From Thecamonas trahens ATCC 50062 (lineage: Eukaryota > Protista > Apusomonadida), in the NCBI RefSeq assembly GCF_000142905.1, contig NW_013657639.1, positions 35,469-99,468 on the forward strand: 64,000 bases of DNA, in the 5' to 3' direction. The notes under the pieces were generated by a model. That model ran no database searches. It had not been told where the DNA came from and saw only the letters and a program-made list of their open reading frames with translations. Within the stretch, counting starts at the first letter, position 1; each line of letters begins with the position of its first letter. Of this stretch, positions 45,308 through 50,679 are shown one piece after another. A program made the translations under genes and the position numbers.

Positions 45308-46567
45308 TCACGAGATGCAGCAGGCCTTGCGATGGCGAGGGCTGCGGTTTGGCGGCGAACGATCGAGATGGCAGCAGGCAGCGCGGAGGAGATCAACGGT
45401 CTCGGTGTGGCCGCCTTCAATGGCCGAGGCGAGTGCTTCGTTGGAGTCGGCGGTGGGGTCGACGGCTGGGTGGGCGAGGAGTGAACGGACGACGTCGGCG
45501 CAGCCATAGCGGGCGGCCCAGCGAATGGGATAGTTAGAGTCGACGGCCGGATCGACTGCAGGATGAGCGAGGAGCAAGTCGACGACTGCGGCAAAGCCAC
45601 GCCCAGCCGCCTGGCGGATCGGCTCGTTGTTGCGCGCCGAAGGATCGACTCGGGCATCGGCCAGCAGCGCCTGGACGACTTGCGGATGATCGTTGCTCGC
45701 CGCCCAGCAGATGGCGCGCTGGTTGTTGTCACCCGGTTCAACGCTGGGATGAGCAAGGAGGAGTGCCACCACGTCGGCGTGCCCGTTGGCGGAGCTCATA
45801 GCAATGGCATCGTTGCCGCACGCGCCAGCATCGACAGCCCCGGTGGCGAGCAGCGCAGCCACGACTGCGGTCGATCCACCAGCGGAGGCCTTGCGAAGCG
45901 CCTCGCTCTCGGCGGCGGCTGGATCAATGTCAGGATGGCCAAGAAGAGCGGCGACCACATCGGCATGGCCAGCGCGACATGCAGCCCGGAGAGCAAGGCT
46001 GTTGTCGGTGGCGACGGCGACGCCGTCGTTCATCAGCACCGCAACTAGACGAGCGAGACCCTCGCACGCGCCCATCAAGAGCATGGTTGTCTTCTCCTCC
46101 TCACTTGCAAGCTCCACCAGCTCAATCGCGAGCTCCTCCAGACCTAATGCAGCGGATACGGAGGCGATGCCAGCCAGTCGAGGCGAGCCGATCCACGCCA
46201 GACCGCCGACTCGCTCGCCGGTTTGTACCTCCACCACAGCAGGCAGCGAGGCAAGGACGTCGACAAGACGGCGCCAAGACGGATTGATACACTCTGCCGC
46301 CGACGCTACCTGGACCAAGTCTGCAAGCGTGAGCGCGGCGACAACGCGAGCATCCAGCGCCCGTGCCGCCGCCGCCCACAGGCCACGTGTGCAGCATGCG
46401 GCAAAGCCCAACAGAGCCTGGGCCCGCAACTTGCCGTACTCGCTGCCAAGGAGCGCAGCGTGGACGTACTGGCACGACAGTGAGAGCGCAAGAACGTCGC
46501 GGGCGTCCAGGGCCGTGCACTCGAACACAATGAGGTGAAGGAGCTCGGGGGCGAGCGCGTCAAGCAT
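45308..46567 (-). CDS. F-box-like + ankyrin-repeat protein with C-terminal CaaX
   Basis: MLDALAPELLHLIV..DVLALSLSC is F-box-like. About 8 ankyrin repeats of the VDPxxDxNxAIRWAAxxG type. Ends RHRKACCIS*. Confidence 0.8.
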   Translation of the reverse strand: MLDALAPELLHLIVFECTALDARDVLALSLSCQYVHAALLGSEYGKLRAQALLGFAACCTRGLWAAAARALDARVVAALTLADLVQVASAAECINPSWRRLVDVLASLPAVVEVQTGERVGGLAWIGSPRLAGIASVSAALGLEELAIELVELASEEEKTTMLLMGACEGLARLVAVLMNDGVAVATDNSLALRAACRAGHADVVAALLGHPDIDPAAAESEALRKASAGGSTAVVAALLATGAVDAGACGNDAIAMSSANGHADVVALLLAHPSVEPGDNNQRAICWAASNDHPQVVQALLADARVDPSARNNEPIRQAAGRGFAAVVDLLLAHPAVDPAVDSNYPIRWAARYGCADVVRSLLAHPAVDPTADSNEALASAIEGGHTETVDLLRAACCHLDRSPPNRSPRHRKACCIS

Positions 46568-46915
46568 GGCTCGAGTTGGCGATGAGATGAGTGTGTCCCG
46601 GTGCCGGTGTTGACGATCGCGAGAAGTTGCGATAGGGAAGGGATGGAAGGGGATTGAGGGAGGGGGAGGCAATAGGAAGACGTAGTGGGAAGGGGATGGG
46701 GGGGCGAGGGGGGGATGGGGGAGATGAGGGGAGGGAAGGGCAAGGGTTCTGAACGGGAGAAGGGTTGAGGTAAGGGGGCTGGGTGAGGGACACAAAAATT
46801 TGTCAGCATGACCACGTGCTAGCAACAAGGCCTTCAGGGGAACGGCCACAACAAAGCCGAAGCTGGCAGGACGGGAGGACGGGGGGGAGCGGGCGGTGAG
46901 GCGGTGGAAGCAGGC

Positions 46916-49630
46916 GCAGAGAGCATTCTCCTCTCTCTCAGCAAGTCACGCCAAGGGAGCACAACATGCACTTGCTTGCTGCTTGTCTCCTGGCGGCGGC
47001 TGTCATGGCTATGGTCGTTCGGGTGGATGGCCATTCTGCCTGGCTCTGTCCCAAGCCGCGCTCGCCCTCGACTGGGCTCAAGGTAAGGGCAGGGGGGGGG
47101 GGGAGGGGGGGGGGGGGGCTCGATGGTAGTCGATATCACTCACTCACATGGCGTGTACGGACGGACGGGGTGCCCATGACATGCTGCTGATGTTGATGGG
47201 GACAGGACTATCCGTGCGGACGTAGCGTCTTCAACAAGTGGGACGGGCCATGGACCTCGGTGGCGCCCGGCAAGCTCACTGTGTCCTGGCATGAGACCAT
47301 CAACCGTACGTCTACATCCTCCTTGGCACCCCATGATCCGTCCGTCATCGCATTCATCGCTTTACTCACCCTCATCCCCCTCCCTCCCGGCCTCGCCTCC
47401 CCCACAGACAACGGCGCGCCGTATCGCATCGCACTCTCACTCGGATCCGGCCCCGACGGGCTGGTGGGTGATTGCACCTTTGAGGACGTGGTCCTTGCTG
47501 ATCACATTCCGCACTGGGACATGGCATCGTCGGACAAGACATACTACTTTACGGTCGACATTCCGAACGTGGACGCGCCGTTTGCCACGCTCCAGCTCCT
47601 CAATCCGATGACTGACAAGCTAATGGGCACCTCGTGCTCGACGATCGGCAACGTGGATGATCCCGAGTGCTTCTCGGTCTACCACTCGTGCGCGTCGATC
47701 AGCATCACTGGCACCACGCCAGTCGCCGACTTTCTGGCCTCGTACACGTACACCACGCCGCCTGGCCTGCCGGCGCCGCCGACGCCAAATGCATGGAGCA
47801 AGGGAGAGAGCGGGACGTGGACCAACGGCTGGCTCCAGGGCCAGAGTACGACGGTCCACGGCGACGCATGCACCGAGTCGACGGCGCCGGCCAACTGGCG
47901 GACGTTCCATGGAACGTGCGCAGACTGCGGATACCCGAGCACATGTGGCGTTGATCGGCCGCCGTCGCCGCCCGCGCCGCCGCCGCCACCTGGCTCGACG
48001 TCCTCTTCAGGTTCAACCTCATCGGGCTCCAGCACGGCGTCTGGCAATCCAGCACAGACCCAGTCTCCGTCGAGTACTGATGACGACAAGGTCCTGGGCA
48101 TGTCCAGGACAGCATTTGGCGGCGTCCTTGCAGGCATCGTCATCGTCATTGTTGTCATCGGCGGCGCGGTTGCATTCATCGTCCACCGCGCCCGATCGTC
48201 TGCTTCATCGCTCGCGATGCCTGCCTACCAAGCAGCAGACACAGATGCCGTCGCTCTCAACAACCGTTTTTAACTCGCCCCCGCCGCCGTCTGCCTCGGG
48301 CGGACCCACTCAAGCCATTTCTTCCCAGCCTCCCCCTCCCTTCTCCTAACTAGCTCTGCCTCTTCCACTAGCGAGGCATGCTCCCAAGCTCAATCTCAAC
48401 CTCTTGCTGCATCTACAGCGCCCGCAAGTCGAACTCAGTGCCTCTGCAACAAACCGTCGCGTATTTTTCTTTCTCTGTGGTCTCTTTCACGTGAATCCCT
48501 GCCTTTTCCAGCAGCAACCAGACCACAGGTGAGAGAGTGAACAGCAGAGACGGGGAGGGGCAGAGAGCATTCTCCTCTCTCAGCAAGTCACGCCAAGGGA
48601 GCACAACATGCGCTTGCTTGCTGCTTGTCTCCTGGCGGCGGCTGTCATGGCTATGGTCGTTCGGGTGGATGGCCATTCTGCCTGGCTCTGTCCCAAGCCG
48701 CGCTCGCCCTCGACTGGGCTCAAGGTAAGGGCAGGGGGGGAGGGGAGGGGGGGGGGGGGGGCTCGATGGTAGTCGATATCACTCACTCACATGGCGTGTA
48801 CGGACGGACGGGGTGCCCATGACATGCTGCTGATGTTGATGGGGACAGGACTATCCGTGCGGACGTAGCGTCTTCAACAAGTGGGACGGGCCATGGACCT
48901 CGGTGGCGCCCGGCAAGCTCACTGTGTCCTGGCATGAGACCATCAACCGTACGTCTACATCCTCCTTGGCACCCCATGATCCGTCCGTCATCGCATTCAT
49001 CGCTTTACTCACCCTCATCCCCCTCCCTCCCGGCCTCGCCTCCCCCACAGACAACGGCGCGCCGTATCGCATCGCACTCTCACTCGGATCCGGCCCCGAC
49101 GGGCTGGTGGGTGATTGCACCTTTGAGGACGTGGTCCTTGCTGATCACATTCCGCACTGGGACATGGCATCGTCGGACAAGACATACTACTTTACGGTCG
49201 ACATTCCGAACGTGGACGCGCCGTTTGCCACGCTCCAGCTCCTCAATCCGATGACTGACAAGCTAATGGGCACCTCGTGCTCGACGATCGGCAACGTGGA
49301 TGATCCCGAGTGCTTCTCGGTCTACCACTCGTGCGCGTCGATCAGCATCACTGGCACCACGCCAGTCGCCGACTTTCTGGCCTCGTACACGTACACCACG
49401 CCGCCTGGCCTGCCGGCGCCGCCGACGCCAAATGCATGGAGCAAGGGAGAGAGCGGGACGTGGACCAACGGCTGGCTCCAGGGCCAGAGTACGACGGTCC
49501 ACGGCGACGCATGCACCGAGTCGACGGCGCCGGCCAACTGGCGGACGTTCCATGGGACGTGCGCAGACTGCGGATACCCGAGCACATGTGGCGTTGATCG
49601 GCCGCCGTCGCCGCCCGCGCCGCCGCCGCC
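46916..49630 (+). repeat. Direct segmental duplication: ~46916-47987 nearly identical to ~48560-49630 (offset ~1643 bp)
   Basis: Side-by-side reading. Differences are limited to CT-tract length, codon 2, the poly-G tract and a synonymous GGA/GGG change. Confidence 0.95.
46966..48273 (+). CDS. Histidine-brace (LPMO-like) type I membrane protein, copy A; exons 46966-47082, 47206-47305, 47408-48273 (360 aa)
   Basis: Signal peptide ending VDG|H; mature HSAWLCPKPR..GLKDYPCG..PGKLTVSWHETINHNGAPYRIAL..VDIPNV..ATLQLLNPM..YHSCA; Pro/Ser stalk, TM helix, short tail. Introns GTAAGG..CAG and GTACGT..CAG. Confidence 0.8.
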
Positions 49631-49862
49631 GGCCACCGACGCCGGCCAGACTGTGTCGGGGAACAAGAACGAGGATGTGATGGGCATGTCAAAGGCCGCG
49701 TTTGGCCTCGTCATGGTCGTCATTGTGGTGGCCGTCTTTGTCATCGGCGCCGCTGTTGGGTTCATCGTTTATCGGGCCAAGACCGCATCGCCGGCGTTCG
49801 CGCCCAGGCCCGCCGGCGAGGCCGGCACAGCAGGCGCGGTCTCGATGCCTGACCGGTTCTAA
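48608..49862 (+). CDS. Histidine-brace (LPMO-like) type I membrane protein, copy B; exons 48608-48724, 48849-48948, 49051-49862 (342 aa)
   Basis: Mature ectodomain identical to copy A; shorter stalk, diverged TM and tail. Confidence 0.8.
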
Positions 49863-50027
49863 GCCTGCTGCTGTGACACGCCTGCCACGGCAAGCTAAAC
49901 ACCTTTCACGCCGATCGTGGCTACCATTGCATGGTTGCTATGCGGGTCAGAGGCAGAGCGGCGTGCGTGTGCTGCTGATGCACGGGTGTGGCAGTGAGTG
50001 CGGCAACTTGCTCGCTTTTACTACGGC

Positions 50028-50679
50028 TTAGTTGATCTTCTTGCGGAAGCTGGCGCCCTCCTGGAGCGAGACGGCACCGCCAGTCGGCTGGCAGAGGACC
50101 TGGTTGCACGAAGCGCAGTAGATGACCGACTGGGCGTGCGAGAAGACGGTAGTGATGGCGATGCAGCCAGGGCACTTGACATCCATGAAGAACGAGTTCG
50201 GCGAGGCCACAAGACGCTTCATCTTGTGCTTGCGGGCCTCATCGGCGGGCGCCGGGTTGGTCATGTCGAGCGACGAGAACTGTGGGTGTGACGAGGGAGA
50301 GAGGCAGAGGGTGAGCGGAGGGGTGAGGGGACTGGCAGCGGAACGGTTGGTTGGAGGCTTAAGGACGCCAGGCCCTGGGGAGGACAGAAAAGGGACAAAG
50401 ACAGCCTGGTCGACCACGAGTGGGGCAGGGAATAGACAGCGGACAATTAGCGGGCATGCCTCTTATGTCAGCGGTCTGCCAGCAAGCCCAGTGCGTTGGG
50501 AGAGGCGGTGCGCGGGCATGGGGGGTGTGCGGCAGGGGGGACGGGGAGGCCGCGAGTCATACAAAACAAATGCCAGGCGAGGGGAGGACGGGTGGGGGGC
50601 TACGGGAGGGAAGGGGGGAGAAAGAGTTGGTGGAAGGGGACAAGGAGGTGGAAGGGGGTAAGACGCGGCGTACGGGCAT
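50028..50679 (-). CDS. RPS27: 40S ribosomal protein S27 (eS27); micro-exon ATGCCC 50679-50674, intron 50673-50280, exon 50279-50028 (85 aa)
   Basis: [45 protein letters not shown]; GTACGC..CAG phase-0 intron gives [11 protein letters not shown]. Confidence 0.93.

What the first reader, a model, noticed from the sequence alone, without database searches (positions are those of the whole stretch)
46966..49862. Hidden tandem pair of membrane-anchored histidine-brace (LPMO-like) copper proteins
Seen in the sequence: the ORF track misses these genes. Splicing three exons gives a signal peptide ending V-D-G|H, so the mature protein begins with His. It continues HSAWLCPKPR..LKDYPCG..PGKLTVSWHETINHNGAPYRIAL..VDIP..TLQLLNPM..VYHSCA, then a Cys-rich module, a poly-Pro stalk, a TM helix and a short tail. 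Established: His1, a second His and a late aromatic before xxC form the copper brace of LPMOs and LPMO-like proteins. The H..P.PR..LK..PCG / WxETIxH.G..RIA / TLQ..M / YHxCA pattern recalls, from memory, the myxobacterial SCE4755-type LPMO-like family rather than fungal AA9. Inference: a cell-surface oxidative polysaccharide-attacking or copper-scavenging system in a probably bacterivorous protist, possibly a new LPMO subfamily.
Basis: partly seen in the sequence, partly recalled or inferred. Interest (0 to 1): 0.9.

Follow-up and report, generated by a model that had tools for sequence, protein, structure and literature searches.

The report
Membrane-tethered histidine-brace copper protein pair
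Two neighbouring genes of the protist Thecamonas trahens encode cell-surface proteins with the fold and key residues of copper enzymes that oxidatively cut tough sugars (LPMOs), and they belong to a large, unstudied eukaryotic family whose real job (sugar attack or copper capture) is still open.

Summary
Window 46966-48273 and 48608-49862 hold two tandem three-exon genes of Thecamonas trahens. Gene 2 is public only as a truncated model, AMSG_12127 (272 aa), which lacks the signal peptide and His1.

Each gene encodes a signal peptide ending just before His23, an LPMO-fold ectodomain, a Pro/Ser/Thr stalk, one TM helix and a short tail.

- The NCBIfam SCE4755 model hits at E 3e-14 over the whole domain. 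That is 53 bits, below the 75-bit cut-off.
- All 68 relatives tested also hit it.
- Pfam LPMO_10 and BIM1-like do not reach threshold.
- The AlphaFold model's 22 best matches among 48,161 PDB chains are all LPMO or LPMO-like. The best is AA15 at Z 11.7, and the alignments start at His23.

The family has at least 1,797 cluster representatives, from protists, a sponge, diatoms and a giant-virus MAG. It has no solved structure, and I found no paper on it. It also carries extra conserved motifs (DHIPH, NPMTDK).

Function is unresolved. I put LPMO-type redox catalysis at about 0.45 and Bim1-like copper capture at about 0.35. RNA-seq and brace geometry could not be tested. Other first-reader notes of this scan cover this same stretch, not other DNA.

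The parts
46916..47987 (+). Near-identical duplicated tract, copy 1. It runs from 50 nt of 5' leader to codon ~266 and includes both introns.
   Evidence: first and last shared 20-mers. About 5 differences in 1,072 nt.
46966..47082 (+). Gene 1 exon 1. Signal peptide is codons 1-22 (46966-47031). The His23 codon is at 47032-47034. The PxPR and GLK motifs follow.
47083..47205 (+). Gene 1 intron 1 (123 nt, GT..AG), with a long G-run.
47206..47305 (+). Gene 1 exon 2. It ends with the first base of the His73 codon.
   Evidence: NF043005 matches profile positions 28-60.
47306..47407 (+). Gene 1 intron 2 (102 nt, in frame, no stop codon). It splits the His73 codon.
47408..48273 (+). Gene 1 exon 3. 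Features: rest of the LPMO-like core (to residue 175, 47715); DHIPH at 47500-47514; NPMTDK at 47602-47619; Tyr164-His165 at 47680-47685; Cys-containing extension, residues 176-255 (47716-47955); Pro/Ser/Thr stalk at 47956-48114; TM at 48115-48183; tail and TAA at 48184-48273.
48560..49630 (+). Near-identical duplicated tract, copy 2.
48608..48724 (+). Gene 2 exon 1. It differs from gene 1 only by H2R in the signal peptide. It is absent from the public model AMSG_12127.
48725..48848 (+). Gene 2 intron 1 (124 nt).
48849..48948 (+). Gene 2 exon 2, with a translation identical to gene 1. It is absent from the public model.
48949..49050 (+). Gene 2 intron 2 (102 nt, in frame). The public model seems to start at an ATG inside it.
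   Evidence: the model begins M-I-H-N-G. The placement of the start codon is inferred from the sequence.
49051..49862 (+). Gene 2 exon 3. The ectodomain is identical to gene 1 up to residue 266. It then has its own shorter stalk, a TM at 49701-49769, and a tail with TAA.
   Evidence: An independent ENA contig, L007, covers 48734-50139 at 99.4% identity.

Best explanation
**Anatomy (about 0.85 confident).** Each gene makes a type I membrane protein.
- Signal peptidase cuts after Gly22, so His23 becomes the free N-terminus.
- Residues 23-175 form an LPMO-type beta-sandwich, and residues 176-255 pack on as an extension.
- The amino group and imidazole of His23, together with the imidazole of His73, would hold one copper ion as a histidine brace. 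Tyr164 sits on the following strand as the axial residue.
- A Pro/Ser/Thr-rich stalk, probably O-glycosylated, holds this domain above the plasma membrane. The stalk is about 53 aa in gene 1 and about 34 aa in gene 2.
- The two genes share one ectodomain and differ only in stalk, TM helix and tail.

**Mechanism I commit to (about 0.45; inferred, not shown).** The copper is redox-active.
- It is reduced at the cell surface by a small reductant or by a membrane electron chain.
- It then uses O2 or H2O2 to oxidise an extracellular glycan, for example prey or biofilm polysaccharide.
- This would make it an LPMO-type enzyme of a so far unclassified family that is sister to the bacterial SCE4755 family.

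The confidence value given for this explanation (0.45) is for the committed mechanism, not for the anatomy.
For: - **Exon model.** It equals the public protein P0001.
- **Signal peptide.** In 102 full-length relatives the conserved His sits at median position 22. Position -1 is A/G/S/C in 101 of 102, and position -3 is small or aliphatic in all. In T. trahens the cleavage site reads V-D-G|H.
- **Family model.** NF043005 gives E 3.2e-14 across the whole domain, and 68 of 68 relatives hit it.
- **Fold.** The AF2 model has high pLDDT (about 85-96) over most of the strands of the domain. In the exhaustive VIA-align search the top 22 of 48,161 chains are all LPMO or LPMO-like: AA15 5msz at Z 11.7, rmsd 2.5, 140 aligned, model 23-175 to chain 1-195; then AA11 10.3, AA10 10.2, X325 9.8. 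Unrelated folds start at Z 6.4.
- **Conserved residues.** His23 91%, His73 97%, Tyr164 98%.
- **Evidence for redox activity.**
  - Two relatives, P0088 and P0193, fuse this domain to DOMON plus cytochrome b561, a transmembrane electron chain.
  - The copper-handling brace proteins CopC and Bim1 are reported not to be redox-active with ascorbate (PMC7529816 abstract).
  - A giant-virus MAG encodes an anchor-less copy.
  - The best structural match is the active enzyme AA15, about 2 Z units above X325.
Against: - No copper binding, redox activity or substrate has been shown for any member.
- The distance between the two histidines could not be measured, because the tools return no model coordinates.
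- None of the 68 + 34 relatives scanned carries a carbohydrate-binding module. Many are tethered by a TM helix or a GPI-like end. The core is compact at about 153 aa. All three traits resemble the non-enzymatic X325/Bim1 family.
- Extra near-invariant residues could saturate the copper site or pass Cu(I) on: His105, His108, Met140, Asp142 and His165. By strand order they probably lie at the copper pole (inference).
- No Glu or Gln sits two residues before Tyr164; that position is Ser162.
- The family occurs in phototrophs as well as phagotrophs, which fits a universal need such as copper uptake.
Confidence: 0.45

Rival explanations
1. Copper capture for import, working like Bim1/X325. The tethered brace binds scarce Cu(II) at the cell surface. 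The copper is then reduced and handed, perhaps via Met140 and nearby His residues, to a Ctr-type transporter. No polysaccharide is cleaved.
For: - Anchors are common: 42 relatives have a TM helix plus tail and 25 have a GPI-like end, out of 166.
- No CBM was found in any relative scanned.
- The core is compact and matches LaX325 at Z 9.8, covering 131 of 150 residues.
- 4 of 68 relatives give weak BIM1-like_dom hits, against 1 of 68 for LPMO_10 (also P0117 and P0195).
- Met140 (96%), Asp142 (99%), His105 (97%) and His108 (89%) are conserved.
- T. trahens has three Ctr genes.
- A b561-DOMON fusion could equally act as a cupric reductase (inference).
- The family occurs in wall-less phagotrophs and in phototrophs.
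- The X325/Bim1 role is described in PMC7924993.
Against: - No BIM1-like hit reaches Pfam's cut-off, and P0001 has none at all.
- AA15 is the better structural match, Z 11.7 against 9.8.
- Bim1 is reported as not redox-active (PMC7529816), which makes a hard-wired electron chain less expected.
- A giant-virus copy without an anchor fits an enzyme better.
- Whether an Asp occupies the fourth equatorial position is unknown.
Confidence: 0.35
2. A non-catalytic surface domain. It would be an LPMO-fold module used for adhesion, glycan binding or signalling, with the histidines serving structure or another metal.
For: - Fold alone shows no function (note).
- Relatives are fused to many unrelated ecto-domains: Hint, trypsin/PAN, M28/TFR, NPP phosphodiesterase and CHRD.
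- T. trahens has lost a Cys pair (positions 129 and 132) that is 99% conserved in the family.
Against: The three brace residues and a ring of polar residues are conserved at 90-99% across very distant eukaryotes. The His is always placed exactly at the predicted signal-peptide cleavage site. That placement only makes sense if the free amino terminus is used.
Confidence: 0.12
3. An artefact: a pseudogene pair, an assembly duplication or chance ORFs.
For: - The two copies are almost identical over 1,072 nt.
- The public model of gene 2 is truncated.
- No read evidence was obtained.
Against: - Both copies have intact frames and splice sites.
- The 3' ends are distinct, and each encodes its own stalk, TM helix and tail.
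- The independent ENA contigs L007 and P0214 carry the gene 2 form.
- The spliced product aligns without gaps at the junctions to intron-less Naegleria and transcriptome homologues.
Confidence: 0.03

Closest known systems
NCBIfam NF043005, 'SCE4755 family polysaccharide monooxygenase-like protein' (bacterial; uncharacterised 'hypothetical equivalog')
   Same: It is homologous over the whole core domain: P0001 residues 23-169 match profile positions 9-144 of 146 at E 3.2e-14. 68 of 68 eukaryotic relatives hit it, the best at 1.5e-22. It shares the N-terminal His, the second His and the late Tyr-x-x-Cys.
   Different: - The score is 53 bits, below the 75-bit cut-off.
- The host is a eukaryote.
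- The protein carries an 80-aa extension, a stalk and a TM anchor.
- The eukaryotic hallmark motif DHIPH found no bacterial relative in 185,579 GTDB species genomes.
- No paper mentions SCE4755 in the library searched.
AA15 LPMO (Thermobia domestica TdAA15A, PDB 5msz), and AA10/AA11 LPMOs
   Same: This is the best structural match: Z 11.7, rmsd 2.4-2.5, 140 residues aligned, His23 on mature residue 1, and the domain end on the chain end. By motif comparison from memory, it has the same strand-then-His placement of the second histidine and the same Tyr/Phe position about 10 residues before the end of the domain.
   Different: - No sequence-level match: P0001 has no Pfam LPMO_10 hit at E<=1, and profile and single-sequence searches of the PDB found nothing.
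- The region after strand 1 is much shorter (about 26 aa).
- There is no CBM.
- It has extra conserved His, Asp and Met residues.
- It is membrane-tethered.
X325 / Bim1 LPMO-like copper-acquisition proteins (LaX325, PDB 6ibh; Pfam PF20238)
   Same: It is a compact LPMO-fold domain with a His brace, tethered to the cell surface through a disordered linker and lacking a CBM. The structural match is Z 9.8, covering 131 of 150 residues. A few relatives give weak PF20238 hits.
   Different: - The PF20238 cut-off is never reached, and P0001 has no hit.
- The T. trahens proteins use a TM helix with a cytosolic tail, not a GPI signal.
- Some relatives are fused to an electron-transfer chain, whereas Bim1 is reported as not redox-active (PMC7529816).
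- Whether an Asp ligand is present is unknown.

Membership tests
LPMO superfamily (histidine-brace copper beta-sandwich) | The mature protein starts with His, directly after the signal-peptide cleavage site. | tested here: met
   This is rule-based, not SignalP. P0001 has a hydrophobic core at residues 3-18, then V(-3) and G(-1) before His23. The same holds in 101-102 of 102 full-length relatives.
LPMO superfamily (histidine-brace copper beta-sandwich) | A second conserved His, and a Tyr/Phe on a late strand. | tested here: met
   His73 is 97% and Tyr164 is 98% conserved in 210 sequences.
LPMO superfamily (histidine-brace copper beta-sandwich) | An LPMO-type beta-sandwich fold. | tested here: met
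   AF2 model. The top 22 of 48,161 PDB representatives are all LPMO or LPMO-like, with Z from 11.7 down to 6.9.
LPMO superfamily (histidine-brace copper beta-sandwich) | The two His nitrogens and the amino terminus are placed to bind one Cu; copper is actually bound. | not testable with these tools
   The tools return no model coordinates and offer no Cu ligand. This needs AF3 with Cu, a crystal structure, EPR or ITC.
LPMO superfamily (histidine-brace copper beta-sandwich) | Oxidative cleavage of a polysaccharide. | not testable with these tools
   This needs a biochemical assay. No member of this clade has been characterised in the literature searched.
NCBIfam NF043005 (SCE4755 family) | Whole-protein score at or above the curated 75-bit cut-off. 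| tested here: not met
   The score is 53.2 bits at E 3.2e-14, collinear over the full length. The scores seen for individual relatives were 35.7-68.2 bits. All 68 relatives hit at E<=1e-3.
Pfam PF03067 LPMO_10 (CAZy AA10/AA15) | HMM score at or above the 23-bit gathering cut-off. | tested here: not met
   P0001 has no hit at E<=1. 1 of 68 relatives hits at E 1.5e-4. No LPMO_10 match was found anywhere in the T. trahens genome. UniRef nevertheless names P0001 'Chitin-binding type-4 domain-containing protein'.
Pfam PF20238 BIM1-like_dom (X325) | HMM score at or above the 27-bit cut-off. | tested here: not met
   P0001 has no hit. 4 of 68 relatives give hits, the best at E 3e-4. The scores seen, for P0195 and P0117, were 21.2 and 20.2 bits, below 27.
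Pfam PF20238 BIM1-like_dom (X325) | An additional equatorial Asp ligand on the copper. | tested here: inconclusive
   Asp142 (99%) and Asp104 (83%) are conserved. By strand order they probably lie at the copper pole, but no distances could be measured.

The most novel reading that the evidence does not exclude
This clade is a new, pan-eukaryotic and giant-virus LPMO family. Its copper centre would be held on the cell surface and, in some lineages, wired in one polypeptide to a DOMON-cytochrome b561 chain. The cell's own cytosolic reductant would then drive oxidative attack on extracellular glycans: a 'cell-powered' LPMO. The T. trahens pair would be the free-standing, membrane-tethered form.
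Probability: 0.3. Interest if true: 0.85.

Novelty: new variant of a known kind. Interest (0 to 1): 0.6.

Why it matters
- **Scope of the family.** LPMO-fold histidine-brace proteins are known either as secreted polysaccharide-cleaving enzymes or, in fungi, as copper-uptake factors. This pair belongs to a large clade of at least 1,797 clusters at 50% identity. The clade has no Pfam model, no structure and no paper that I could find. It spans apusomonads, heteroloboseans, CRuMs, a sponge, diatoms, green algae and a giant-virus MAG.
- **If it is an enzyme.** It would be a new auxiliary-activity family. It would also show that wall-less phagotrophs carry oxidative glycan chemistry on their surface. 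The b561-DOMON fusions would give a natural built-in electron supply for an LPMO.
- **If it is a copper-capture device.** The Bim1 principle would extend far beyond fungi, including to marine phototrophs living at low copper.
- **A small practical point.** The public model of gene 2 (AMSG_12127) lacks the very residues that define the protein.

Tried and rejected
- **Joined protein of gene 2.** Its exons were searched by reference. Whole-protein work used the database's own P0001.
- **Sequence searches of the PDB.** P0001, the family profile, P0027 and P0009 gave no relevant hit.
- **Bacterial relatives.** A genome-contig scan with the DHIPH pattern found none. A second word-indexed search with P0027 found only eukaryote-type proteins. 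I therefore did not build a tree or test for gene transfer between the SCE4755 bacteria and eukaryotes.
- **NF043005 over the six-frame genome.** Nothing reached threshold exon by exon. This is uninformative.
- **Literature.** 'SCE4755', LPMO with Naegleria, LPMO with b561/DOMON, and CYBDOM with LPMO returned nothing relevant.
- **Gene conversion versus recent duplication.** The ENA contig differs from gene 2 by 0.6%, and the paralogues differ by about 0.5%. This does not separate the two scenarios.
- **Fungal AA9 membership.** Rejected. AA9 structures score only Z 7-8 with rmsd above 4 Å.
Full report
**What is there**

The window is from Thecamonas trahens ATCC 50062. The exon 3 translation of the first gene is 100% identical to NCBI 'uncharacterized protein AMSG_12126'. 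The window has 64.6% G+C.

Reading the DNA gives two head-to-tail genes on the + strand, each with three exons and GT..AG introns.
- Gene 1 exons: 46966-47082, 47206-47305, 47408-48273.
- Gene 2 exons: 48608-48724, 48849-48948, 49051-49862.

I searched the models exon by exon, by reference. The three exon translations of gene 1 lie at residues 1, 40 and 74 of the database protein P0001 (360 aa). The split codon CAC gives its His73. I never joined the gene 2 exons. Their translations are identical to gene 1 except for H2R in the signal peptide, up to residue 266.

The public model of gene 2, AMSG_12127, has only 272 aa. It starts M-I-H-N-G, so it lacks the signal peptide, His1 and the first 72 residues. 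'Hidden' therefore applies to gene 2's N-terminus, not to gene 1. The prokaryote-style ORF list does show most of exon 3, because intron 2 (102 nt) is in frame and free of stop codons.

**Is it real?**

- Both frames and all splice sites are intact.
- No third copy was found in the 28.7-Mb genome.
- An independent ENA contig, L007, covers 48734-50139 at 99.4% identity. It links the shared ectodomain to gene 2's own 3' end. A second ENA ORF, P0214, carries the same form.
- The spliced protein aligns without gaps across both junctions to Naegleria proteins and to transcriptome-derived proteins such as that of Diphylleia rotans.

**Anatomy**

- **Signal peptide.** P0001 has a hydrophobic N-terminus and then V-D-G|H.
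- **Family-wide cleavage logic.** In 102 full-length relatives the conserved His is at median position 22. Position -1 is A/G/S/C in 101 and position -3 is small or aliphatic in all 102. Placing the His exactly at the cleavage site is the hallmark of proteins that use the free amino terminus as a metal ligand.
- **Fold.** The AF2 model (mean pLDDT 76, with about 85-96 over most strands of the domain) shows a beta-sandwich for residues 23-175, a packed extension to about residue 255, a disordered stalk, and a helix at 311-341.
- **TM segments.** The hydrophobic TM segment is residues 309-331 in gene 1 and 290-312 in gene 2. Each is followed by basic residues and a tail of about 29-30 aa ending in R-F.

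**Family**

- NCBIfam NF043005 (SCE4755 family polysaccharide monooxygenase-like) matches residues 23-169 to profile positions 9-144 of 146. The E-value is 3.2e-14 and the score 53 bits, against a cut-off of 75.
- Exons 2 and 3 alone already gave weak collinear hits to this model.
- All 68 relatives hit it, the best at 1.5e-22.
- P0001 has no Pfam hit to LPMO_10 or BIM1-like. Among the 68 relatives, one weakly hits LPMO_10 and four weakly hit BIM1-like.
- No PDB sequence is within reach.
- Foldseek's best matches are LPMOs. In the exhaustive VIA-align search of 48,161 chains the first 22 are all LPMO or LPMO-like. The order is AA15 5msz (Z 11.7, rmsd 2.5, 140 aligned), AA11 10.3, AA10 10.2, X325 9.8, and then AA13, AA16, AA9 and fusolin. 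Unrelated sandwiches begin at Z 6.4.
- Nearly every alignment starts at model residue 23 and mature residue 1 of the target.

Strict membership is not met.

**The clade**

- **Size.** A profile search of 1.84 billion representatives finds 1,797 proteins at E<=1e-3 and 1,068 at E<=1e-10.
- **Named sources.** These are Naegleria, the sponge Oscarella, the diatom Thalassiosira and Diphylleia.
- **Giant virus.** A giant-virus MAG carries an anchor-less copy beside a helicase-like ORF.
- **Atlas neighbours (leads only).** These include Nucleocytoviricota, Chlorophyta and bacterial SCE4755 clusters.
- **Conserved residues in 210 sequences.** The brace residues are His23, His73 and Tyr164. Also conserved are Glu69, Arg79, Asp104, His105, Pro107, His108, Met140, Asp142, Lys143, His165 and several Cys.
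- **Where they sit.** By the alternation of strands in the model, the DHIPH and NPMTDK motifs probably lie at the same pole as the brace (inference).
- **A loss in T. trahens.** Both paralogues have lost a Cys pair (positions 129 and 132, now Ala) that is 99% conserved elsewhere.

**Function**

Two readings fit.

*Evidence for a redox enzyme:*
- Two relatives are fused to DOMON plus cytochrome b561.
- CopC and Bim1 are reported not to be redox-active (PMC7529816).
- A giant-virus copy exists.
- AA15 is the best structural match.

*Evidence for copper capture, as in Bim1/X325 (PMC7924993):*
- No CBM was found in any of the relatives scanned.
- Membrane or GPI-like tethers are frequent.
- The core is compact.
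- Met, His and Asp residues are conserved near the site.
- The family occurs in phototrophs.
- T. trahens has Ctr transporters.

T. trahens also has many DOMON genes, so either kind of partner is available. I put about 0.45 on the enzyme reading and about 0.35 on copper capture.

**The pair**

The copies are 99.5% identical from 46916 to 47987 versus 48560 to 49630, introns and leader included. After that they share only about half their bases. This fits gene conversion or a recent partial duplication that keeps one ectodomain on two different anchors. My data do not separate these two scenarios.

**Verdict**

This is a real and correctly read pair of membrane-tethered LPMO-superfamily proteins. 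They belong to an uncharacterised eukaryotic sister clade of SCE4755. The pair is interesting as a candidate new LPMO or LPMO-like family, but its function is unproven.

Noticed in passing
window 48608-49052; protein P0213: The public model AMSG_12127 (272 aa) of gene 2 begins M-I-H-N-G. It seems to start at an ATG inside intron 2, so it lacks the signal peptide, His1 and 72 residues that are present and intact in the DNA.
   Followed up: yes
window 46916-47987 versus 48560-49630: The paralogues are 99.5% identical over 1,072 nt, including 50 nt of leader and both introns. They then diverge sharply in stalk, TM and tail. This points to a gene-conversion tract or a partial recent duplication.
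   Followed up: partly
window 47306-47407 and 48949-49050: Intron 2 is 102 nt, in frame and free of stop codons, and it splits the codon of the second brace His. Retaining the intron would replace His73 by Arg and insert 34 residues, as seen in the ORF-style ENA proteins P0002 and P0214.
   Followed up: partly
window 47090-47122 and 48732-48765: Intron 1 has a G-run of about 30 nt. Two of the few differences between the paralogues lie in it (one substitution and one indel).
   Followed up: no
L008:2929-3780 (IMG/VR GVMAG-M-3300013014-33): A giant-virus MAG contig encodes a 283-aa member of the same family. It has a signal peptide, His1, DHIPH and the MTDK core of the NPMTDK motif (IMTDK), but no anchor. 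It lies next to a 647-aa helicase-like ORF.
   Followed up: partly
proteins P0088, P0193 (Logan contigs): These relatives are fused to DOMON (one or two copies) plus cytochrome b561, a transmembrane electron chain in the same polypeptide as the brace domain.
   Followed up: partly
proteins P0076, P0078, P0082, P0143, P0195, P0168, P0198: Other relatives are fused to a Hint module (three cases), trypsin plus PAN, PA-M28-TFR, an NPP-type phosphodiesterase, and CHRD. Two carry WW domains and one a GYF domain in the cytosolic tail.
   Followed up: partly
window 47584-47595 (residues 129 and 132): Both T. trahens paralogues have Ala at two positions where 99% of the family has Cys (a CxxC pair). 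The coupled loss is consistent with a disulfide.
   Followed up: no
G000 contigs C13, C41, C62, C4, C103 and others (L009-L012): T. trahens has at least 25 DOMON matches. L009 is a DOMON plus Cu2-monooxygenase (DBH-like) gene. L010, about 90 kb from this pair on the same contig, has a Reeler domain next to DOMON.
   Followed up: partly
window 50028-50417 (-) and 45308-46849 (-): Flanking ORFs. Downstream is a ribosomal protein S27-like zinc-ribbon ORF (identified by eye only). Upstream is a long ankyrin-repeat-like ORF, which another note of the scan flags as F-box plus ankyrin.
   Followed up: no
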